Shown: piece after piece, positions 20,888 to 35,143 of the stretch
Layout: every line of letters begins with the position of its first letter
How positions within the stretch are numbered: the stretch's first letter is position 1
Origin: Macrostomum lignano
Taxonomy: Eukaryota
Length of the DNA stretch: 64,000 nt
Assembly (NCBI GenBank): GCA_002269645.1
Contig: NIVC01000986.1
Location: forward strand, 186,001 to 250,000
Reading direction: 5' to 3'
The notes under the pieces: model-generated
What the model was told of the DNA's origin: nothing
The model's database searches: none
Seen by the model: only the letters and a program-made list of their open reading frames with translations
Position numbers and translations under genes: made by a program

Positions 20888-22903
20888 ATGGAAGATGTGA
20901 GTTCCTGTTTGTGGGCCTTCCGAGAATTAAGAAAAAATCAGCATTAGTTGAGGCGCTCTCAAAAACGCTGTAAAAGACATTTCGCACTCACATGTAGTTC
21001 GTATAACCTCAGGTGGATGAGTTTCCTCACTTCAAAGTCCCCACACAAACCTGAAACAGTAATAGGCAGAATATTGTAAGACGTCATGTAAAAAGGCGCA
21101 CAAATACAAATGAACTATTTTTAGAACAAAGTCCACGCCACGCCAGCTTCAGAAGAGAGTAAGAGCACTGGAGCACTGCTGACGCAGGTCCTGGCCGCGG
21201 CTGCCAGCGAGACCACAGCCCACGGGCTCAGCAGGCTGGCGGGCCAGAGGCCGCTCTACATCAAGCTCTGCTGGCTGCTGGCCTTCCTGGCCCTGCTCGC
21301 TGTGTTCACCTTCAGCATGCACGGCTTCACAAGCAAGCTCGTCAGAGGCGAGGTCAGCACTTCCTACGAGGCCGAGGCTGTGGACTTCCAGTTTCCCGAC
21401 GTGTACTTCTGCAACAATGTCCAGGTGTCGGGCACCTACTCCGTCACGCTCGCCAGCGAGGTCGTCACCGACATCAACGCCAGGGTGACCGCCTCGCTCG
21501 CCACCTTCGACTCGGCGCTGCAGCGGCTGCTCAACTCGTCGCTCGCGAACGCCACCGAGTCTCAAATCGAGCAGATGAAGCTGTACAGACTGAAGTCCGC
21601 CATCCAGTCAATGCCGTACAGCTTGCTGGTGGACCATCTCGCTCACAAGGAGCAGCAGACGGTACTGAAGAACGACAGCAAGTCGGGCGTCTCCCTCAGA
21701 CCCTTCTATCACTCGAATCACCTCAAGTGTCTCAAGGTCGAGCTGACCGAGCAGAGACTCGCTGAGCTGAGCAAGGTCAACTCGGAGATCAGCTTCCAGT
21801 TCATTCTGGATCCGTACTTCACCGACTTTTATAGCGTATTGAATGTCAGCGCGTATTCACAGGTAATGAGCGTGACGGTCCCGCTGTACAACAACCTGAG
21901 TACATTCGTGTACGACTGGGACCTGGACTCGCCCTACGAGATCGACAGGCCGATGGGAATGAGGCTGTACCTGGCTCCTCGAGGCGAGTACCCGAGCAGG
22001 TTCGTGACCAACTTCCTGCTCGCTCCCGGCAGGTCCTACAGCATCGGGCTCAGCATGCAGAGCATCAAGAAGGAGCCCGAGGCGTACGGCGGACGCTGCC
22101 TGACGGAGGCTCCCGATGTGCAGTTCGTCAATCCGTACGACGGCTCGGCATACGCGTTCGGCTACAGCAACAGCTTCTGCTACTTCTCAGAGTTCGCTCG
22201 GCAGCTGTCTGTGAACGGCGGCTGCAGTCCGTACGTGAACCCGCTGCCGTGGCAGTTCAGGCACCTGCGCTTCTGCCTGAATGCGAGCGGCCTGAACGAG
22301 TCTCAGATCGAGTCGAACCTCCTGCAGGCGTTCACAGCTGACACGGCCGCGCTGAGCGACTTCCAGCAGCTGTGCCAGAGCAGGCAGCTGTGAGCGTCAC
22401 GGAAGTACGAGACCAGCACCTCCAGCGCGAACTGGCCCAACGAGAACGGGCAGATCCGGGTCATCACCGACGTGATGAAGACAATCTTGGAACAGGAGCC
22501 GAACGTTTCGAGGCCCGCTTGGTCAGCTATTAATCGGCTCATATCCATCTATTATTTCAGTCTTTCGCATTTGGAACAATTGGCTGAAAAGTTCTTCTCC
22601 CGTTCGGGCCTGAAAGTGACGCTGCGCAGCCAGGAGTCGCGCAGCTCGCAGATCCGACTGTCGCCCGGCTACTCTCTGCAGACGTTCATCGCCGACATGG
22701 GCGGCACTGCGGGCATCTACCTCGGCTGCAGCCTGCTGAGCCTGTGCGAGCTCGTCGAGCTGCTGTACAACCTGATCAAAGTGCTGAAGAGGCGCCCGAA
22801 TGCAAACGCAGTACACGCGATGCCTAAAATGCAAAATGGCAGCTCTGCTCATTTAGATGAAGGAAAACTCGATGAAATGAGCTCAGAGCAACAGCGGGTT
22901 TGA
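20888..22903 (+). CDS. DEG/ENaC (amiloride-sensitive Na+ channel family) subunit with one in-frame TGA at 22391-22393
   Basis: The frame is open from acceptor 21124/21125 to 22903 except for one TGA. Motifs: pre-TM1 TTAHG, TM1 CWLLAFLALLAVF, FPDVYFCN, Cys-rich loop, KYETSTSSANWP, TM2 FIADMGGTAGIYLGCSLLSLCELVE. A tentative first coding exon is ATGGAAGAT|GTGAGT at 20888-20896; the N-terminus is uncertain. Confidence 0.85.
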
Positions 22904-24130: not shown

Positions 24131-25150
24131 ATGACGACCACCGCTGAAAAGCTGCGAGCTGTCGGAATGGCTGGAGCTGCATGGCACGCACTTCTTGCAG
24201 GCCGCGCGCTGAAGACGATCCATCCGGCAGCTGCTGGCCAAGTGGCAACGCACCAGCTCGGTTGCCCATGGCAACTCTGGCCGACTGCGAAGGCAGACAA
24301 CTGCGAGAGCTGACGACTTCTTTGGCTTGTCCGCGCGAACCGGACATTGCCAGCCAGCCACGATGCTGCGCCTGCTATGGCGCGAGAGTTCATCACGCTA
24401 GCTGCCCAGTGCCAGACAGTCCAGCGCAGAATCTGAGAGACAGCGTTGGCGTTCCCGGAAGATGAGGAAGCGGCTGCGACTGTCACCTGCGCAGTGAAGG
24501 CGAGTGGTTTTCAGCGACGAGGGTCGCTTTCGTCTTTTCCACAGCGACGGCCGAGTTCGTGTGTGGCGGGAGTCTGGACAGGAACTTCTCCCGAGTGCGT
24601 GTGTAGCGGGAGTCTGGAAAGGAGCTTCTCCCCGAGTGCGTGTGTGGCGGGAGTCTGGACAGGAGCTTCTCCCCGAGTGCGTGTGTGGCGGGAGTCTGGA
24701 CAGGAGCTTCTCCCGAGTGCGTGTGTGGCGGGAGTCTGGACAGGAGCTTCTCCCCAAGTGCGTGTGTGGCGGGAGTCTGGACAGGAGCTTCTCCCCGAGT
24801 GCGTGTGTGGCGGGAGTCTGGACAGGAGCTTCTCCCCGAGTGCGTGTGTGGCGGGAGTCTGGACAGGAGCTTCTCCCCGAGTGCGTGTGTGGCGGGAGTC
24901 TGGACAGGAGCTTCTCCCAGAGCTGCATCCTTCAAGATGACAACGCTCCGCCGCATCGAGCAGTCGCTGTGCATCTACTGGAAGAGCAGCTGGGAATCCG
25001 AATGCTGCGTTGGCCTTTAAGGTCGCCGGACATGAACCCAGTCGAGTACGCCTCGGACGTTATCAAGCGACGCACCCAGCAGCAGCAGAATCCTCCTGCG
25101 GATGCGGCTGGCAGTGATGGAAGTTTGGCAGCAGCTGCCACAGGACCGCA
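24131..25150 (+). mobile_element. Decayed Tc1-family transposase (pseudogene)
   Basis: Fragments across frames: QLLAKWQRTSSV..SGRLRRQTTARADD (HTH), Q*RRVVFSDEGRFRLFHSDGRVRVWR (first D), LQDDNAPPHRA (second D) and WPLRSPDMNPVEY..DVIKRR (E). It has stops, frameshifts and a deleted mid-catalytic region. Confidence 0.85.
24555..24918. repeat. 40-41-bp tandem expansion inside the Tc1 transposase
   Basis: Unit GAGTGCGTGTGTGGCGGGAGTCTGGACAGGAGCTTCTCCCC, ~9 copies. Confidence 0.93.
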
Positions 25151-25285
25151 TCAACAGGCTCAGCATGCCACGTCGAGTTGCTGCCCTGCTTCAAGTACGC
25201 GGGGCGTCCACGCGCTACTGACTTCTAGCAAGAGACTGTCTGCATGTGCACTTTTGCGTGATGCACTTTACTGCTGCAGCTTTAC

Positions 25286-25600
25286 TGCTCTAGCCTAGTG
25301 GTTAGAGCGTCGGACTCGCGATTGAAAGGTCGGGGGTTCGATTCTCGACTTATTCGGAACAATTCATGTTCTTGAGAAAGACACTTAACCCTGCATTGCT
25401 TCAGTTCACCCAGCTGTAAAATGGGTGCCAGCATTAGCTGGGGTAACTGAGGGTGTGTGGTGACTCCCCCCCGCCAGTCATTGGATTGAACAGCCGTACG
25501 CAGCCTTCTGATGCTCTGCGCAATAGCTGCGGCTGAGTGGTCGGTTGCATCTCTGCACTTTGGGTCAGGTGTAGTCAATTATTATCATTATATTAATACA
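25286..25600 (+). mobile_element. tRNA-derived SINE with a CORE-like central domain
   Basis: A box TAGCCTAGTGG and B box GGTTCGATTC. The central TTGAGAAAGACACTTAACCCTGCATTGCTTCAGTTCACCCAGCTGTAAAATGGGT resembles the CORE-SINE consensus. Ends in an (ATT)n-like tail. Confidence 0.75.
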
Positions 25601-26639: not shown

Positions 26640-29600
26640 TCAAAGTGGATCCTCACCGCCTGCAAGTCGCAGACACCGGTGCCAGTGTTTGCCCCAGTGC
26701 CTGGCGCGGCTGGGAAAGACCTGGAGGGAGCTGCTGCTTTCCACAGGACGCTTGCGGCTGCTTGAGAGAATAAAGCTCTGGGCATGGAGCTGTGTCAATA
26801 AAGTTGGCTTGGATGCACTCAGACTCACCCACTCAATGCAGCTCGGCACTGCAGTCCAAGTCACTCGCTATTGAAGAATCAGCCATTTTAGATACAGTTA
26901 CAAGTCCACGGAGAGAACGACGGTTTTCGGCAACTTGGAGAATATGATTCGGAGACTGGGATTGGGAGATGTATAGGTTCATTCACGTCACCAGTTAGAT
27001 CACTGGTTCATTCACGTCACCAGTTAGATCACTGGTTCATTCACGTCACCAGTTAGATCACTGATTCATTCACATCACCAGTTAGATCACTGGTTCATTC
27101 ACGTCACCAGTTAGATCACTGGTTCATTCACGTCACCAGTTAGATCACTGGTTCATTCACGTCACCAGTTAGATCACTGGTTCATTCACGTCACCAGTTA
27201 GATCACTGGTTCATTCACGTCACCAGTTAGATCACTGGTTCATTCACGTCACCAGTTAGATCACTGATTCATTCACATCACCAGTTAGATCACTGGTTTA
27301 TTCACGTCACCAGTTAGATCACTGGTTCATTCACGTCGCCAGTTAGATCCCTGGTTCATTCACATCACCAGTTACATCACTGGTTCATTCGCACGATCCC
27401 TAAGCTGGAATATCAAAGAATTGAGCACACGAGAGATAAAATTCAAACTTAAAGTTTGATAAGAGCGTGGCGCAGTGCGACAGAAGCACTTGACAACCCA
27501 TGTATTTACTGCAATAGCAATCTGCAGGAATGCAAGGGGTACACTCGTATTCGCTCAGGGAAGCCAAAGCTGTCTTCGCCTACTGTATAGTTATTCTAAT
27601 CTAATATATCCGTGTAATACTCGTAAGATACTTAAATATTAATCACAGCCAATAAATTTTAGTGCAAAAATATAGATTATAAAAACCATAAACTGAGATA
27701 AATTTTGCCGCTCTGCATACACAAATGGCGCAAAACAGCTATTTGAAAATTGATTATAATAGCATCGCATTAAAGCTACTTACAGTAATATTGATAGTAC
27801 CATGTAAAAACGCCAAAAATTACGGATTTCTGGTTAAATAAAGCTAGAAAAAAAGCTCTTGCTTTCGGCGGCAGTCAAATCAAGCAAAAACTCTGTTGCT
27901 GATTGAAAGATCTGCGGCAGCTTAAATTGGCTCCATGACCTGCAATGCGGGATGGATTAAGCAATAATCCTGCACTCAGTCTGTCCCTGCCAGTTACTCA
28001 GCCACTCTCACCTGCTTCCAAGGCTTTGGTTCGTTTGGATCCCGCAGGTAGGCACCAGCAGCGAGCTCTGACAGCGAGACCAGCACCGCGGGAGTGGTGG
28101 CCAGGCTTTCCGGCAGCCTGCAGGCGATGTGGCGCGAATTAGGGCGAGAACTGTGTGAGACTGATATGAGAACTGTGTGAGACTGATATGAGAACTGTGT
28201 GAGACTGATATGAGAACTGTGTGAGACTGATATGAGAACTGTGTGAGACTGATATGAGAACTGTGTGAGACTGGTATGAGAACTGTGTGAGACTGATATG
28301 AGAACTGTGTGAGACTGATATGAGAACTGTGTGAGACTGACATGAGAACTGTGTGAGACTGATATGAGAACTGCGTGAGACTGACATGAGAACTTATGCC
28401 TTACCCAAGCAGCCGCTCAACGATGGCCCGGGCGCAGCAGACAGCAAAGACGGACTCGGCGTGGGTGAGCTTGTAGAACTGCTGGCGCGAGGCCGGCCCG
28501 AGACAGGCGGACAGCTCCTTCTGCTGGCTGTTGTACATGAAAGCCAGCGTCTGAGGGGATTCGGGAATGTATCAATGTGCCACTTGCTAATAGAGCTGAC
28601 GGCCTGGCAGCCCCGCAGGAGGCAGCCCGCGACTCACCTTGACATCCTCCATGCTGGAATTCACGGGCAGCAGGCTCAAGAATGCCGGGTGCCGCGGCAG
28701 CGGGTTCAGGCAGAACAGCAGCACCGGGGCCGACCGGCTCCGTCTACGGCACAGCGCCAGGTACAGCAGGCTGGTGAGCCGGGCGGAGGTCAGGAACACC
28801 GGCGACAGAAACAGCGCCACCACGCTGGCCTGCGGAGTGAGAGGGTTGAAGGCTTGCAGGCTCACCTGCTGCATCACTCCCAGTCTGTCTCACCTGCTGC
28901 ATCACTCCCAGTCTGTCTCACTTGCTGCATTGCACTCCCAGTCTTATCTGCTGCATCACTCCCAGTCTTATCTGCTGCATCACTCCCAGTCTCACCTGCC
29001 TCATCACTCCCAGTCTGTCTCACTTGCTGCATCACTCCCAGGCTCACCTGCTGCATCACTCCCAGTCTCATCTGCTGCATCACTCCCAGTCTCATCTGCT
29101 GCATCACTCCCAGTCTCACCTGCCTCATCACTCCCAGGCCTACCTGCTCCATCGCCTCCATATCGTCATGCGCCTGTTCGGAGTCCAGACAGCGCACCTG
29201 CAGGTCGGTCGCGAATTCCTTGGCTTGAAGTCGGACGGCCTCAACCAGCGGCTCGCGCTCATCCGGGTGGCAGACTAGGGCCGCGTGGCAGATGTCCGCA
29301 ACTGGCAGGGGCCTCTCAGCAGCTGCAGCTGCCGCGGCCTTCACGAAAGCGCCCAGGCTGGCTGAGCTGAGCAGCGGCGGTTTTGCATTCAGCAGCGACT
29401 GGCGCAGCTTGTCGGTCTGGGACATCAGGGTGGAGAGTTCCTGGCGGTGGGTGCGGGAGACACTGGTGCATCGCCCGACACTCGGAAATAGTTTTCAAAA
29501 CATATGACCGAATTCGGAGACAATTTACAATGCATCAAGTAATTTTGACGCGACACTTCCAAGAACGATCACGTAACATTCTGAAACAGATCACGTGACA

Positions 29601-32600
29601 TTCTGAAACAGATCACGTGACATTCTGAAACAGATCACGTGACATTCTGAAACAGATCACGTGACATTCTGAAACAGATCACGTGACATTCTGAAACAGA
29701 TCACGTGACATTCTGAAACAGATCACGTGACATTCTGAAACAGATCACGTGACATTCTGAAACAGATCACGTGACATTCTGAAACAGAAACTCACGTGGC
29801 AATCTGGAAACAGCTGCTCTTTGAGATGGGCCGCCTTCTTGTCCCCTGACTTGGCCGTCAGCACCTTGGCAACGGAGGCGGCCACCCGCTTGACGCACTG
29901 CTCCCTGGAGACGGTGGCGTCCAGCCAGCGGGCCACGGACTGCAGCGCAGGAGGGCAGGCGGGCCCCAGGCGCTCCAGGCAGACGGGCAGCAGCAGGGCT
30001 TGGTGCCGGTCGCAGCGGTGCAGCATGGAGGCGATGGTGAACTCCTCCAGACAGACGGCCGACTTGGCGTAGTCCGGCGTCAAGAAGGCGACGATGAGAC
30101 GGCTGCCGCTAATGGCAGAGTAGATGGTCTCCATCCAGGAGAAGCCCGTCTGGATGCCCTGCTTGTCAAAGAAGATACGCAGCGCGGGGCAGGCGAGCCG
30201 CAGCTGGGTGAGGAACGGCTCCACGGCGGCCGAGTTGCGGTGGCAGTAGGAGATGAAGATGTCGTAGCCGCTGCCGCCGCCGGGCACCGCGGCCGGTGCC
30301 AGAGCCGGCTCGGCCTGCTTGGAGTCGCCTGCTGGATGCGGTTCAAAACACGCAAACTCAAACTGGGCCGCTTCATTCACCCACCTGGCCGCTTCACTCA
30401 CCCACCTGGCCGATTCACTCACCCATCTGGCCGCTTCGCTCACCCACCGAGCCGCTTCACTCACCCACCTGGCCGCTTAGCTCACCCACCTGATTGCTTC
30501 ATTCACCCACCTGGCCGATTCACTCACCCACCTGGTTGATTCACTCACCCACCTGGCCGATTCACTCACCCACCTGGTTGATTCACTCACCCACCTGGCC
30601 GCTTCACTCACCCACCTGACCGATTCACTCACCCACCTGGCCGATTCACTCATCCACCTGGCCGATTCACTCATCCACCTGGCCGATTCACTCACCCACC
30701 TGGCCGATTCACTCATCCACCTGGCCGATTCACTCACCCACCTGGCCGATTCACTCATCCACCTGGCCGATTCACTCATCCACCTGGCCGATTCACTCAT
30801 CCACCTGGCCGATTCACTCATCCACCTGGCCGATTCACTCATCCACCTGGCCGCTTCACTCACCCACCTGGCCGCTTCACTCACCCAACGCAAGCCGTTC
30901 CAGCCTGCCGCCGATCTCCCCGATGGCGGCCTGCAGTTTGTCGCAGCCGGGCTGGTCTGTTGGTTTGGGCCGGCAGTCAATCCACTGGATTAGCGACATG
31001 TAGGTGGGCGGGCTGGCCAGCCGCTCCAAGCAGACGGGCAGGAAGGGATGCCACCGCGTGTGCGCCAGGCACATCGCCACGTTGAAATCCTCGACGCAGG
31101 CCCGGGTGGCCAGGAAGGCCTGCGACAGCAGACAGACCACCAGACGGCTGCCCAGCATGTCGGAGCGCCGGGCGTCGATTGCTGACGTCGCAGCCGCCGC
31201 TTTGCTGCCTTCAGCAGCCTCGTCGCCCGACGAGCTGCTGCTGCTATCGTCACTGTGCACCACCTTGCGGCAGCGCAGGCTTTTCTGGTTGGCCTTCAGA
31301 CTGCGGGTGGTCCGCTCCAAGAACTGCAGGTCCTTCTCGCTGCAGACCACTAGCAGGTCCGCCTCAATGGGCACCGGCTGAGGGTTGGGGCAATTGGACA
31401 AGGACTTCTGAATCTTTTATCTGGAGTGGAAACTGGCCATTTTCATGCACCATGAGACTGGCTGGCTGGCTGTAGGCCAGGGAGATCGGGAAGGCAGTTC
31501 TAGAGCTTCGGTAAAGATAGTAAGAAAAAATGCTCTCAGATGAAAATTAGGAAGGGTTCCAGTCCACTCCAGCCTGCTCTGCCTAGAACTCCTTGACCCA
31601 AACACTGACGGTTCCACAGCCCACTCCAGCCTGCTCTGCCTAGAACTCCTTGACCCAAACACTGACGGTTCCACAGCCCACTCCAGCCTGCTCTGCCTGG
31701 AACTCCTTGACCCAAACACTGACGGTTCCACAGCCCACTCCAGCCTGCTCTGCCTAGAACTCCTTGACCCAAACACTAACGGTTCCACAGCCCACTCCAG
31801 CCTGCTCTGCCTAGAACTCCTTGACCCAAACACTGACGGTTCCACAGCCCACTCCAGCCCACTCTGCCTGGAACTCCTTGACCCAAACACTGACGGTTCC
31901 ACAGCCCACTCCAGCCTGCTCTGCCTGGAACTCCTTGACCCAAACACTGACGGTTCCACAGCCCACTCCAGCCTGCTCTGCCTAGAACTCCTTGACCCAA
32001 ACACTGACGGTTCCACAGCCCACTCCAGCCTGCTCTGCCTGGAACTCCTTGACCCAAACACTGACGGTGCTCACATCAGGCTTTCTGTGCCGACTCTCGA
32101 AGGCGTGCTTGAGCCGCTGGAACTCTTGGACGGGCCCGCCTGTCGTCCTCGGCGAGGCTCTCCACGGCCAGCTTGGAGGTGTAGATGACCAGAGTGTAGC
32201 GCCGCATGGGCAGGCCGATGCTGATCCACGTGTGCCAGGCCGTCACCAGCGCGTGCATGATGCGCGACTTGGAGGCCCGCTGGCAGCCCGTGGCCAGCAG
32301 CGGGCTGATGACGCTCATGTTGTCGGCGAACACCGTGAACATGGCACGGAAGATCTCGCCTACCGCCTTCTCGGGACTGCGCTCTCTGTTGGCCACCACC
32401 TGCTGCTCGAAGCAGAGCAGCCGCCTGTTGGTGGTGAGTGGGAGCCAGTCAGTCTGACACAAAGTGCTCTTATTCGCAAGCGCAGGTCTGCCTTACTTGT
32501 ACGGCAGATCAGAAGGCAGCGGCTTGGAGATCCAGCAGTTGAAGTTTTTCCGCAAGTCCTCGGCCTTTTCCCTGGCCAGGTCCCGCACGCTCAGGTTGAA

Positions 32601-35143
32601 CTGGCGCTTCAGGGCGCCGATAAGGGTTGACGGGACTGCTGAGTAGTCGGCTGAAACGAGGGTCGCGTGAGCTTCAGATCATAGGAATTTAACGGTAGAA
32701 CAACAAACTAGGAGCAGCCCCGTGACAGCTCAAAATCGATCTCAAAACTTGTCATGCAAAGATATTTTCGAAAAGTCCAAAATAATCGGCACATATTGCA
32801 ACACTTGCAAGCAGAGTTAATCTATTGTAGTAATGCTAGCAGGCTTGGGCACTGCCGCAAATCACGGCGGCAGCAGACCTGCAACACATGAAATCGAGCC
32901 CAAGGTGTTTTGGTGTGATGAGCCAGATGCGTTACCGCTGAGCCACTCTGCGTGCTGAGCCACTCTGTGTGCTGACTGAGCCACTCTGCGTGCTGAGCCA
33001 CTCTGTGTGCTGACTGAGCCACTCTGCGTGCTGAGCCACTCTGTGTGCTGACTGAGCCACTCTGCGTGCTGAGCCACTCTGCCCCTACTGTGCTGAGCTA
33101 CTCTGCCCCTACTGTGCTGAGCCACTCTGCGTGCTGAGCCACTCTGCCCCAACTGTGCTGAGCTACTGCCCCTACTGTGCTGAGCTACTCTGCCCCTACT
33201 GTGCTGAGCTACTCTGCCCCTACTGTGCTGAGCTACTCTGCCCCTACTGTGCTGAGCTACTCTGCCCCTACTGTGCTGAGCTACTCTGCCCCTACTGTGC
33301 TGAGCTACTCTGCCCCTACTGTGCTGAGCTACTCTGCCCCTACTGTGCTGAGCTACTCTGCCCCTACTGTGCTGAGCTACTCTGCCCCTACTGTGCTGAG
33401 CTACTCTGCCCCTACTGTGCTGAGCTACTCTGCCCCTACTGTGCTGAGCTACTCTGCCCCTACTGTGCTGAGCTACTCTGCCCCTACTGTGCTGAGCTAC
33501 TCTGCCCCTACTGTGCTGAGCTACTCTGCCCCTACTGTGCTGAGCTACTCTGCCCCTACTGTGCTGAGCTACTCTGCCCCTACTGTGCTGAGCTACTCTG
33601 CCCCTACTGTGCTGAGCTACTCTGCCCCTACTGTGCTGAGCTACTCTGCCCCTACTGTGCTGAGCTACTCTGCCCCTACTGTGCTGAGCTACTCTGCCCC
33701 TACTGTGCTGAGCTACTCTGCCCCTACTGTGCTGAGCTACTCTGCCCCTACTGTGCTGAGCTACTCTGCCCCTACTGTGCTGAGCTACTCTGCCCCTACT
33801 GTGCTGAGCTACTCTGCCCCTACTGTGCTGAGCTACTCTGCCCCTACTGTGCTGAGCTACTCTGCCCCTACTGTGCTGAGCTACTCTGCCCCTACTGTGC
33901 TGAGCTACTCTGCCCCTACTGTGCTGAGCTACTCTGCCCCTACTGTGCTGAGCTACTCTGCCCCTACTGTGCTGAGCTACTCTGCCCCTACTGTGCTTCC
34001 TTATACTTTAACACTGCAAGCCCGATCTCTATTAATAACCCATAAGTTTGCTCACCAGAGAAGGCCGAGATCATGATGACATCATAAGGCTCCTCACCAG
34101 GCACAATCTTGGTGATGTCTCCCAGACAAAGCTGCATCTCAGCCTGCTGGACTCTACTGGGCGAGTCCACCTGAATTTGGGACACCTGATGTAGCATTTT
34201 AATCAGGTGCACTGAAATAATTAATACAATGGGTATCAGCAGTAGGCAAAGTAATATAGCTTGTATTATTTTGCATTATTAAAACCTAGCCAACTAAGGT
34301 AATAACTTCAAGCTAGAACAGTTATATTGTTACTTGAGCAGAGCAAAGTATTAATACAAGCTACTATTGGTCTTGCTACAAGCTACTATCAAAATTAGCT
34401 ATCTAGATATAGTTTCTAGTGCATTTAAAGCTGCAATTACCTAGTGATTAGGGAAACATTCTGCAGATAAAGACTTCAACTAGCAAGCCATATGTGTATC
34501 ATCCATATGGATGCCTATTGCTCTCAACCAGTATATAAGATATTCTATTAATCCCAATTCAAGGCCCTTATTATTACCAATCTTGTGCTAAATCTAATTT
34601 GATATTTACCTTACATAAATTTTATTATTGTTTCCCAATAATTTACCTTGTTATGTAACAACTATGTAACAACATAGGTTACATAGGCCCCCTAGCTTTA
34701 CAAGACATATTTTGTTTTCAAATTAAATAGTTTTTCTTATTGGCTTAGACTTTAATGTCCCTTCTTTCTTTTAAAATTCTCTCTTTCTCTTTCTAAAAAA
34801 TGTATGTAGGAAATACAAATAACATAGAATCATAATTTTGTAAACAGAAAGCTTTATGAGTATCAATAGAACTTAAAGAAGACATATTAAAAGTTAAACA
34901 CTGGGTCTGCCTCCTATCTAAATCAACAAATTTTGTGCTGAAAATGAAAACCATATATTTCCGTAATATATTTTTCAGTAAAATCAGCCTCCTAAGATTT
35001 TCTAGAAACCTAGTTTCCCGTCCTTTTACTTGAGTGAGTATTCCTTGGTCCTGTCTTAGGACAGGAAGCATTGACAGATCAATCAATAATAAACAAGTCA
35101 GATCTTGAAGCCAGCCGTTACCCGCATAGAAAATGAAAGCCAT
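26640..35143 (-). CDS. Macro-like N-terminal domain + three TIR domains (>815 aa); one +1 frameshift as assembled
   Basis: Exons (minus): 35143-35122, 34211-34056, 32650-32497, 32424-32075, 31377-30885, 30331-29796, 29440-29144, 28829-28638, 28550-28405, 28117-28012; last exon(s) near 26867-26640 are tentative. All are phase-consistent except one extra base near 32132. Motifs: QLCLGDITKI..DVIMISAFS-ADYS..LIGAL..EDLRKNFNCWIS..RLLCFE..PLLATG; TIR YDIFISYCHRN..IFFDKQGIQTGFSW..SRLIVAFLTPDYAKSAVCLEEF. Confidence 0.75.
26976..27391. repeat. 29-bp minisatellite
   Basis: Unit GGTTCATTCACGTCACCAGTTAGATCACT, ~14 copies. Confidence 0.95.
28146..28393. repeat. 22-bp intronic minisatellite
   Basis: Unit GAGAACTGTGTGAGACTGATAT. 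Confidence 0.95.
28860..29143. repeat. ~24-bp intronic minisatellite carrying donor-like CAG|GTGAG on the minus strand
   Basis: Unit CTCACCTGCTGCATCACTCCCAGT with variants. Confidence 0.9.
29565..29787. repeat. 22-bp intronic minisatellite
   Basis: Unit GATCACGTGACATTCTGAAACA, abutting the donor at 29795. Confidence 0.95.
30365..30886. repeat. 21-bp intronic minisatellite that includes the 5' splice site
   Basis: Unit CCACCTGGCCGATTCACTCA(C/T); the minus strand reads G(G/A)TGAGTGAA. Confidence 0.95.
31562..32068. repeat. 57-bp intronic minisatellite, ~9 copies (unrelated to the CDC45 57-mer)
   Basis: Unit CCACTCCAGCCTGCTCTGCCTAGAACTCCTTGACCCAAACACTGACGGTTCCACAGC. Confidence 0.95.
32935..33997. 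repeat. Intronic array: related 16/20-bp units grading into a perfect 24-bp unit
   Basis: GAGCCACTCTGCGTGCT-type units, followed by CTACTGTGCTGAGCTACTCTGCCC x ~35. Confidence 0.96.

What the first reader, a model, noticed from the sequence alone, without database searches (positions are those of the whole stretch)
26640..35143. Animal Macro-like + triple-TIR protein: possible one-polypeptide nucleotide-signalling immune module
Seen: the spliced minus-strand gene encodes an N-terminal alpha/beta domain opening with a Macro-type LxxGDIT motif (QLCLGDITKI..DVIMISAF), followed by three TIR-like repeats. No LRR, TM or ARM region was found. Known: TIR domains (SARM1, plant TNLs, Thoeris ThsB) cleave NAD+ using a conserved Glu, and type II Thoeris pairs a TIR with a Macro-domain sensor of the ADPR-derived signal. 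Inference: a signal writer and reader may be fused here, a bacterial-defence-like logic in a metazoan gene.
Basis: partly seen in the sequence, partly recalled or inferred. Interest (0 to 1): 0.8.

Follow-up and report, generated by a model that had tools for sequence, protein, structure and literature searches.

The report
Flatworm Macro-like plus triple-TIR gene
This flatworm gene joins an unannotated ADP-ribose-binding-type (Macro-like) domain to three TIR immune domains, and the same Macro-like-plus-TIR unit occurs in hundreds of bacteria, some archaea and many invertebrates, so it is a real, conserved and uncharacterised candidate NAD-signalling immune module, though this copy carries a one-base frameshift.

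Summary
The gene is real. It lies on the minus strand at 34197-28401, narrower than the finding's 26640-35143. It has eight GT-AG exons, and the window matches Macrostomum lignano protein A0A1I8IEA3 exactly.

The N-terminal domain has no Pfam, NCBIfam or PADLOC hit. It nevertheless models confidently (pLDDT 90) as a Macro fold. Foldseek top hits are all macrodomains, and hhalign against E. coli YmdB gives 95% probability, E 3e-8. It keeps the adenine-contacting GD(I/L)T Asp but lacks the MacroD catalytic Asn and Asp and the GGG loop, so it is probably a binder rather than a hydrolase.

Three TIRs follow. Only TIR2 keeps the catalytic Glu.

The Macro-like+TIR pair is a conserved unit:
- The family has 1171 clusters at 50% identity.
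- A TIR follows directly in 119 of the top 150 representatives.
- It occurs widely in bacteria and some archaea.
- A single animal clade of molluscs, echinoderms, a brachiopod, a nemertean, a coral and this flatworm carries the Macro-like+3xTIR form.

Two caveats apply. The genomic sequence has a +1 frameshift in exon 3; as written, the conserved splice sites give a 214-aa Macro-only product. The writer/reader mechanism is untested, and there is no specific link to Thoeris ThsA.

The parts
34056..34197 (-). Exon 1: ATG (34197) and the first strands of the Macro-like domain, with LGDITK (34125-34108) and ISAFS (34071-34057). An acceptor-like tttcag lies 15 nt upstream of the ATG.
   Evidence: orthologue N-termini align here
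32497..32650 (-). Exon 2: Macro-like domain, DYSAVPSTLIGAL...DLRKNFNCWIS. It holds the family-invariant Y50, D79 and W87.
32075..32424 (-). Exon 3: Macro-like domain, with RLLCFE (invariant E105), PLLATGCQ (loop 2, G145) and the last helix VQEFQRLKHAFESRHRKPD (32131-32075), which is encoded in a different frame. Ends at the strong donor GAT|gtgagc.
32128..32140 (-). +1 frameshift site (GGCGGGCCCGTCC). As written, frame 0 runs on to the TGA at 32078-32076, giving a 214-aa Macro-only product.
30885..31377 (-). Exon 4: TIR1, the counterpart of the bacterial TIR. The catalytic position is Asp (CVEDF, 31098-31084).
29796..30328 (-). Exon 5: TIR2, canonical, with the catalytic Glu retained (CLEEF, 30053-30039). 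The database model removes 30224-29973 as an in-frame 252-nt intron.
29144..29440 (-). Exon 6: linker and the N-terminal half of TIR3.
28638..28829 (-). Exon 7: C-terminal half of TIR3. The catalytic position is Leu (LTSLLYLAL, 28778-28752).
28401..28550 (-). Exon 8: conserved C-terminal helices (...HAESVFAVCCARAIVERLLG) and the TAA stop.

Best explanation
**What it is.** The gene belongs to a conserved invertebrate family, Macro-like + TIR1 + TIR2 + TIR3. Its first two domains are homologous to a widespread prokaryotic two-domain protein, Macro-like + TIR.

**Most likely mechanism.** These steps are inferred, not shown.
1. The Macro-like domain is a non-hydrolytic pocket for an adenine-containing ADP-ribosyl ligand: ADPR, NAD+ or a TIR-made ADPR derivative.
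2. Ligand occupancy gates the assembly and activity of the adjacent TIRs. This is how the ARM domain gates SARM1, and how STING, SAVED and CARF domains gate their fused TIRs.
3. TIR2, the only TIR with the catalytic Glu in every orthologue, cleaves NAD+.
4. TIR1 and TIR3 are mostly non-catalytic partners that supply the TIR-TIR interfaces a composite TIR active site needs.

**What is shown.** The fold, the homology, the motif pattern, the obligate Macro-like-to-TIR adjacency and the taxonomic spread.

**This locus.** It carries a 1-base frameshift that is either an assembly error or a very recent inactivation.
For: **Macro fold and homology.**
- The AF2 model has pLDDT 90.1 and pTM 0.88.
- Foldseek PDB top hits are all macrodomains: Af1521, macroH2A1.1, OiMacroD, YmdB and PARP9/14/15, with prob 1.0. 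Viral matches are likewise macrodomains.
- The profile hits only macrodomains among PDB sequences.
- hhalign against YmdB gives 95.2% probability, E 2.9e-8, over 159 columns.

**Binder rather than hydrolase (alignment).**
- GDIT aligns with YmdB GDIT. The Gly-Asp is invariant in 76 sequences and nearly invariant in 143.
- YmdB N25 corresponds to Phe, YmdB D35 to Ile, and the GGG loop is absent.

**Tight coupling to TIR.**
- 129 of 150 representatives have a TIR.
- In 119 the TIR follows directly, with a median gap of 12 aa.
- The pair stays together when fused to NUDIX, Hsp70-like, FHA or kinase domains, T6SS sheath proteins or CHAT-NB-ARC.

**Catalytic Glu.**
- Bacterial TIR: 69 of 70.
- Animal TIR2: 11 of 11.
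- Animal TIR1: 2 of 10 orthologues.
- TIR3: 8 of 11 orthologues; Leu in the window.

**One animal origin.** The 15 animal sequences form one clade in 199 of 200 bootstraps.

**Frame maintained after the frameshift.** Exons 4-8 total 1665 nt, stay in frame and contain no internal stop.

**Conflict-system context in a subset of prokaryotes.** TPR-S, patatin and a second TIR protein are conserved neighbours in 10-15 of 76 loci.
Against: - No ligand binding or NADase activity has been measured for any family member.
- Loops 1 and 2 of the pocket are remodelled, so the ligand may not be ADPR-like at all. I could not inspect model coordinates to confirm that the invariant S44, W87 and E105 line the cleft.
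- Those three invariant polar or aromatic residues could equally mark a new catalytic site.
- Most prokaryotic loci show no conserved partner gene, so the source of any signal is unknown.
- In this locus the frameshift uncouples the Macro-like domain from the TIRs.
- No M. lignano transcript-derived protein for this gene appeared in the protein searches.
Confidence: 0.45

Rival explanations
1. Writer and reader in one chain. TIR2 makes a specific ADPR-derived second messenger, and the Macro-like domain of the same or neighbouring molecules reads it. This would give self-propagating, feed-forward activation without a separate effector gene.
For: - The Macro-TIR pairing parallels type II Thoeris, where a TIR product is read by a Macro domain (papers read).
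- ThsA Macro domains oligomerise on ADPR binding.
- Most prokaryotic loci have no conserved partner, so the system may be self-contained.
Against: - All characterised sensor-TIR fusions use the TIR as an NAD+-depleting effector, not as the signal writer.
- No downstream effector domain is present in the animal proteins.
- There is no sequence link to ThsA_Macro.
Confidence: 0.15
2. The Macro-like domain is an enzyme of a new catalytic type. It would remove ADP-ribose from a substrate or degrade the TIR product, acting as a built-in brake or eraser. This resembles the Macro antidotes of DarT/DarG or the SirTM-Macro pairs.
For: - S44, W87 and E105 are invariant across 143 representatives.
- A NUDIX fusion points to ADPR metabolism.
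- Macro antidotes paired with NAD+-using toxins are established knowledge.
Against: The MacroD catalytic Asn and Asp and both glycine-rich loops are replaced. No known catalytic constellation (MacroD, TARG1 or PARG type) is recognisable.
Confidence: 0.12
3. Non-enzymatic adaptor. The three TIRs act only as scaffolds in Toll/MyD88-type signalling, and the Macro-like domain is a protein-binding or PAR-binding module.
For: - TIR1, and in this species TIR3, lack the catalytic Glu.
- Conserved invertebrate TIR families have been proposed as adaptors (PMC6321704).
- Several orthologues end in a CaaX-like motif, suggesting membrane recruitment.
Against: - The TIR2 catalytic Glu is invariant in 11 of 11 animal sequences and 69 of 70 bacterial ones.
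- The module exists in bacteria and archaea, which have no Toll pathway.
Confidence: 0.13
4. This particular locus is a recently inactivated pseudogene, or it encodes only a 214-aa Macro-only protein. The frameshift would then be real, not an assembly error.
For: - The frameshift and the in-frame TGA lie before the conserved donor.
- TIR3 has lost the catalytic residue that 8 of 11 orthologues keep.
- No matching transcript-derived protein was found.
- A related transcript, L002, also gives a Macro-only ORF followed by out-of-frame TIRs.
Against: - 1665 nt downstream stay open and conserved with canonical splice sites. The chance of that is about 1e-6 at 66% GC (my arithmetic).
- The indel sits in a G/C homopolymer run, which is typical of long-read errors.
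- All family-invariant residues are intact.
Confidence: 0.4

Closest known systems
Type II Thoeris (ThsB TIR + ThsA Macro-TM)
   Same: It pairs a TIR NAD+-processing domain with a Macro domain that binds an ADPR-derived ligand. Both Macro domains are divergent, and the nearest structural neighbours of both are OiMacroD, PARP14, macroH2A1.1 and Af1521.
   Different: - Thoeris uses two separate proteins, with the Macro domain fused to a transmembrane effector.
- Here the two are fused in one chain in the order Macro then TIR, with no TM segment.
- There is no sequence match to ThsA_Macro models or structures.
SARM1
   Same: An animal protein in which an N-terminal nucleotide-binding regulatory domain controls a C-terminal TIR NADase. 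The catalytic Glu is in the same helix position (established knowledge; for the alignment logic).
   Different: SARM1 has an ARM sensor, SAM octamerisation domains and one TIR. This family has a Macro-like domain, no SAM domain and three tandem TIRs.
Sensor-TIR fusions of bacterial defence and invertebrates (TIR-STING, TIR-SAVED, CARF-TIR Cat1)
   Same: A single polypeptide combines a small-molecule sensor with a TIR NADase. Cat1 TIR is the best PDB sequence match of TIR2.
   Different: The sensor fold differs. Those systems have an adjacent signal-synthase gene, whereas most Macro-like-TIR loci have no conserved partner.
MacroD-type macrodomains (E. coli YmdB, Af1521, OiMacroD)
   Same: - The fold (TM 0.6-0.74).
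- The GD(I/L)T adenine-contacting Asp.
- The P-x-x-x-T-G start of loop 2.
   Different: - The catalytic Asn and Asp and the GGG loop are replaced.
- Loop 2 reads G-(D/N/C)-Q instead of G-V-Y-G.
- The family has its own invariant S44, W87 and E105.
- It does not reach Pfam Macro.
Evolutionarily conserved invertebrate TIR-domain families (ecTIR-DC, Gerdol et al. 2017)
   Same: A TIR family that is absent from vertebrates and widespread in molluscs, echinoderms, cnidarians and brachiopods.
   Different: I could not read that paper. Whether this family is one of its classes, and whether its N-domain was recognised there, is unknown.

Membership tests
Macro domain superfamily | Three-layer alpha/beta/alpha macro fold | tested here: met
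   The AF2 model has pLDDT 90. Foldseek top-50 PDB hits are all macrodomain structures or macrodomain-carrier fusions, prob 1.0, TMt 0.6-0.74. Viral macrodomains match likewise.
Macro domain superfamily | Detectable sequence homology to bona fide macrodomains | tested here: met
   hhalign of A1 against YmdB gives 95.2%, E 2.9e-8. The profile against PDB gives YmdB E 3e-4 and only macrodomains. However, Pfam Macro models give no hit even at E<=10.
Macro domain superfamily | Adenine-contacting Asp in the N-terminal GD(I/L)T motif | tested here: met
   G26 and D27 are invariant in A2 (76 sequences) and nearly invariant in A5 (143 sequences). They align with YmdB GDIT.
MacroD-type ADP-ribosyl hydrolases | Catalytic Asn (NAAN), Asp (GVDGAI) and the Gly-rich loop 1; G-[VIL]-[YF]-G in loop 2 | tested here: not met
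   In the alignment, N25 corresponds to F46, D35 to I58, GGG is absent, and loop 2 is TG-C/N/D-Q.
Macro domain superfamily | Binds ADP-ribose or a derivative | not testable with these tools
   Needs ITC, DSF or a crystal structure.
TIR domain (NADase-competent) | Pfam TIR/TIR_2 match above the gathering score | tested here: met
   TIR2 scores 65.8 bits and TIR1 28.3 bits, against a cut-off of 28. TIR3 scores only 16.4 bits, but its AF2 model best matches TIR structures.
TIR domain (NADase-competent) | Catalytic Glu in the alphaC helix (C-x-x-E motif) | tested here: met
   Met for TIR2 only: CLEEF aligns with Roq1 WCLEEL and Cat1 WCWDEL. TIR1 has Asp and TIR3 has Leu.
TIR domain (NADase-competent) | NAD+ cleavage | not testable with these tools
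   Needs an enzyme assay.
Type II Thoeris | ThsA-type Macro domain (PF20016, or the PADLOC/NCBIfam ThsA models) fused to a TM effector, with a separate ThsB | tested here: not met
   - The N-domain has no Pfam, PADLOC or NCBIfam hit.
- The only Thoeris-model hits are through the TIR and lie far below the cut-offs.
- No TM segment is present.
- The protein is a single fused polypeptide.
SARM1 family | ARM repeats + tandem SAM + TIR | tested here: not met
   Pfam finds only TIR domains.

The most novel reading that the evidence does not exclude
Macro-like+TIR is an ancient, self-contained immune module shared by bacteria, archaea and invertebrate animals. A previously unrecognised Macro clade senses an ADPR-type nucleotide and switches on the fused TIR NADase. 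This would add a cross-kingdom TIR signalling system alongside SARM1, TIR-STING and Thoeris. In animals, the three tandem TIRs would form a pre-assembled composite active site.
Probability: 0.3. Interest if true: 0.8.

Novelty: new variant of a known kind. Interest (0 to 1): 0.62.

Why it matters
TIR domains are NAD+-processing immune enzymes in bacteria, plants and animals. How they are switched on is the central question for each system.

This work identifies a domain that no library searched here annotates and that is almost always fused directly in front of a TIR. The family has 1171 clusters at 50% identity. The domain is a divergent Macro domain, the fold that reads ADP-ribose. One animal lineage kept the module and added two more TIRs.

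The result is a concrete, testable candidate for ligand-gated TIR signalling that is conserved from prokaryotes to invertebrates. It also points to tractable bacterial proteins of about 340 aa for biochemistry. In addition, it corrects the database gene model for this flatworm locus.

Tried and rejected
**Searches that found nothing.**
- Pfam, PADLOC and NCBIfam on the N-domain gave no hit. Every hit on the bacterial homologues came through the TIR.
- I looked for a downstream CaaX exon like the one in several orthologues. The only candidate...TCNCI* at about 26900, is not in phase with the possible donor at 28403, so I rejected it.
- An exact look-up of P0124 in the assemblies found nothing on record.
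- Literature searches for Macro-TIR, TIR-Macro, ecTIR-DC, flatworm TIR proteins and conflict-system papers found no description of this module. Gerdol 2017 is not held.

**Ideas rejected.**
- The ORFs at the ends of the finding's interval (34793-35143 and 26640-26864) have no family or homologue support.
- I considered a tiny intron as a fix for the exon-3 frame. The only GT..AG candidate is 26 nt and gives the wrong frame.

**Technical failures.**
- The first Biopython tree run timed out. I redid it with numpy.
- A Pfam scan of the 143-sequence alignment exceeded the size limit. I replaced it with my own TIR HMM.
Full report
**Locus and organism.** The region is eukaryotic. The exons are separated by introns packed with minisatellite arrays. 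The UniRef protein A0A1I8IEA3 of the flatworm Macrostomum lignano (P0124, 635 aa) maps residue for residue onto ten minus-strand segments between 34197 and 27925. The window is therefore M. lignano DNA, or a sequence identical to it. tblastn found no second copy in the window.

**Gene model.** I used splice consensus and alignment to orthologues to build an eight-exon model. Every intron is GT-AG.

| Exon | Coordinates | Content |
|---|---|---|
| E1 | 34197-34056 | Start codon, Macro-like domain |
| E2 | 32650-32497 | Macro-like domain |
| E3 | 32424-32075 | Macro-like domain, frameshift |
| E4 | 31377-30885 | TIR1 |
| E5 | 30328-29796 | TIR2 |
| E6 | 29440-29144 | Linker, TIR3 N-half |
| E7 | 28829-28638 | TIR3 C-half |
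| E8 | 28550-28401 | C-terminal helices, TAA stop |

The CDS is 2311 nt, one base too many. Inside E3, at GGCGGGCCCGTCC (32140-32128), the frame shifts by +1.
- Upstream, frame 0 encodes the Macro-like core.
- Downstream, the next frame encodes VQEFQRLKHAFESRHRKPD. This is the conserved last helix of the domain; its F and K are invariant in the 12 animal sequences and nearly invariant in the 76-sequence family alignment. That frame ends at the strong donor GAT|gtgagc.
- In frame 0 a TGA occurs at 32078-32076, so the sequence as written gives a 214-aa Macro-only product.

Deleting one base gives a 769-aa ORF colinear with the 764-783-aa orthologues. Exons 4-8 (1665 nt, 66% GC) are in frame with no internal stop. 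I estimate the chance of that at about 1e-6, so the frameshift is either an assembly error in a G/C homopolymer run or very recent.

The database model P0124 differs in three ways:
- It avoids the problem with a weak donor (AGA|gttcca).
- It removes the in-frame 252-nt core of TIR2 (30224-29973), through which all homologues align.
- It ends in a four-residue exon instead of the conserved C-terminal helices.

**The N-terminal domain is Macro-like.** Pfam, PADLOC and NCBIfam do not recognise it. The evidence for a Macro fold is as follows.
- With a 76-sequence alignment, AlphaFold2 gives pLDDT 90.1 and pTM 0.88.
- Foldseek against the PDB returns only macrodomains, or fusions that use a macrodomain as crystallisation carrier, in the top 50. 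These include Af1521, macroH2A1.1, OiMacroD, YmdB and PARP9/14/15, with prob 1.0, E about 1e-7 and TM up to 0.74.
- The viral library returns coronavirus and torovirus nsp3 macrodomains and phage macrodomains.
- The family profile finds only macrodomains among PDB sequences, with YmdB at E 3e-4.
- hhalign against E. coli YmdB, fetched, gives 95.2% probability and E 2.9e-8 over 159 columns.

In that alignment the GDIT motif matches YmdB GDIT, which carries the adenine-contacting Asp of macrodomains (established knowledge). PLLATG matches FPAISTG, the start of loop 2. However, YmdB N25 and D35 are replaced by Phe and Ile, the GGG loop is missing, and loop 2 reads G-(C/N/D)-Q. The family has its own invariant residues, S44, W87 and E105, across 143 representatives. 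I conclude that this is a divergent Macro clade. It probably binds an adenine nucleotide and is not a MacroD-type hydrolase.

**The three TIRs.** Pfam TIR_2 gives E 2.7e-6 for TIR1, 6.6e-18 for TIR2 and 0.014 for TIR3. The TIR3 model has pLDDT 84, and its best PDB matches are TIR domains (RPS4, MyD88, SNC1, AbTir), mixed with other flavodoxin-like folds at modest E-values. Aligning TIR2 with Roq1 and Cat1 fixes the catalytic Glu as the second E of CLEEF. Residues at that position are as follows.

| Domain | Window | Orthologues / family |
|---|---|---|
| Bacterial family TIR | n/a | Glu in 69 of 70 |
| Animal TIR1 | Asp | Q/K/M in most; Glu in 2 of 10 |
| Animal TIR2 | Glu | Glu in 11 of 11 (window included) |
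| Animal TIR3 | Leu | Glu in 8 of 11 |

**Family and distribution.** A profile of the N-domain finds 1171 clusters at 50% identity with E<=1e-3.

The best matches are invertebrate proteins of 630-990 aa with the same Macro-like + 3xTIR layout. They come from:
- molluscs: Solemya, Pecten, Pinctada, Batillaria;
- echinoderms: Antedon, Amphiura, Lytechinus, Strongylocentrotus;
- the brachiopod Lingula;
- the nemertean Tubulanus;
- the coral Porites.

A transcript-like contig from a public sequencing run (L002) also carries the Macro-like domain and the TIRs on one RNA.

The bulk of the family is prokaryotic, about 340 aa, Macro-like + one TIR. It occurs in Planctomycetota, Acidobacteriota, Chloroflexota, Cyanobacteria, Bacteroidota, Proteobacteria, Myxococcota, Verrucomicrobia, an Asgard archaeon and methanogens.

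Of the top 150 representatives, 129 carry a TIR. In 119 it follows the Macro-like domain directly, with a median gap of 12 aa. The 21 without a TIR are mostly short proteins in which the Macro-like domain takes up most of the length, consistent with truncation. The pair stays intact when fused to NUDIX, Hsp70-like, FHA or kinase domains, to the T6SS sheath proteins VipA/VipB, or to CHAT + NB-ARC.

Animal TIR1 shares the bacterial C-terminal signature (PxYM...DCR...AC). It is therefore the counterpart of the bacterial TIR, and TIR2 and TIR3 are additions. In a neighbour-joining tree of the Macro-like domain, the 15 animal sequences form one clade in 199 of 200 bootstraps. That indicates one origin in animals rather than contamination or recent transfer.

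**Prokaryotic context.** Clustering the neighbours in 76 loci shows no conserved partner in most. A subset of 10-15 loci shares a TPR-S protein, a patatin-like phospholipase and a second TIR protein. That is the kind of company seen in conflict systems.

**Mechanism.** None of this is shown experimentally. My preferred reading is a ligand-gated TIR. The Macro-like pocket would bind an ADP-ribosyl ligand and control assembly of the adjacent TIRs. TIR2 would be the NAD+-cleaving unit, with TIR1 and TIR3 as structural partners. The reading rests on four points:
- the conserved adenine-binding motif without hydrolase residues;
- the obligate adjacency to TIR;
- the invariant TIR2 Glu;
- the analogy with SARM1 and with STING-, SAVED- and CARF-TIR fusions.

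Type II Thoeris is an analogy only. Its ThsA Macro shares the general fold neighbours but shows no specific similarity here.

**Novelty.** The held literature contains no description of a Macro-TIR module. The one paper likely to have classified the animal family (Gerdol 2017) could not be read. I rate this a new variant of a known kind. It is of real interest for the family as a whole and less so for this particular, possibly damaged, copy.

Noticed in passing
window 26976-27390, 28146-28394, 28857-29153, 29567-29813, 30366-30887, 31560-32068, 32937-33997: Every intron of the gene, and the 3' flank, is filled with a different minisatellite array (periods 17-57 nt, up to 39 copies, 84-100% matches). 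Several arrays begin at or next to a splice site, and their units repeat donor-like (GGTGAGTG, CAGGTGAG) or acceptor-like (TGTTTCAG) motifs. Some stay open in one frame for more than 160 codons.
   Followed up: partly
alignment A3 (orthologues P0129, P0269, P0135, P0136, P0132, P0134): Six orthologues end in a CaaX-like tail (SKTCTIL, SRTCCVS, SRSCSLL, SSSCVLL, SKSCQIL, SVACHLL). This suggests prenylation and membrane anchoring. The flatworm protein stops earlier, and no such exon was found downstream.
   Followed up: partly
L002 77-2099: A related transcript contig (run SRR15559849, species unknown) encodes the Macro-like domain as a 235-aa ORF. It then continues in another frame from the middle of TIR1 and lacks about 75 residues of TIR1, as if an exon had been skipped. 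It too would yield a Macro-only product, like the window as written.
   Followed up: partly
P0145, P0227, P0237 (prokaryotic representatives): In these proteins the Macro-like+TIR pair is fused to the C-terminus of the type VI secretion sheath proteins VipA-VipB, in one case with a kinase and an FHA domain in front. Other fusions involve NUDIX, Hsp70-like and CHAT+NB-ARC domains.
   Followed up: no
P0124 / UniRef100_A0A1I8IEA3: The UniRef name 'VLIG-type G domain-containing protein' does not fit the sequence. Pfam finds only a TIR domain and no GTPase domain.
   Followed up: partly
window 24504-25298 (+): A degraded Tc1/mariner-type transposase fragment (DDE_3, E 1.3e-5, below the cut-off). 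It is interrupted by a 41-nt tandem array at 24551-24922.
   Followed up: partly
window 21302-22393 (+): A long ORF matching the amiloride-sensitive sodium channel family (Pfam ASC, E 8.9e-11). It is probably an exon of a neighbouring DEG/ENaC gene.
   Followed up: no
window 34198-34217 (-): An acceptor-like ttatttcag lies 15 nt upstream of the start codon. It could be an upstream 5'-UTR exon junction or a spliced-leader trans-splice acceptor; M. lignano is known to trans-splice (from memory).
   Followed up: no
L028, L040, L046, L076 and similar Bacteroidota loci: In 10-15 prokaryotic loci the Macro-like-TIR gene sits in a conserved same-strand cluster. The cluster contains a TPR-S protein, a patatin-like phospholipase, a second TIR protein with a CarboxypepD_reg domain, and a PorP/SprF-like protein.
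   Followed up: partly
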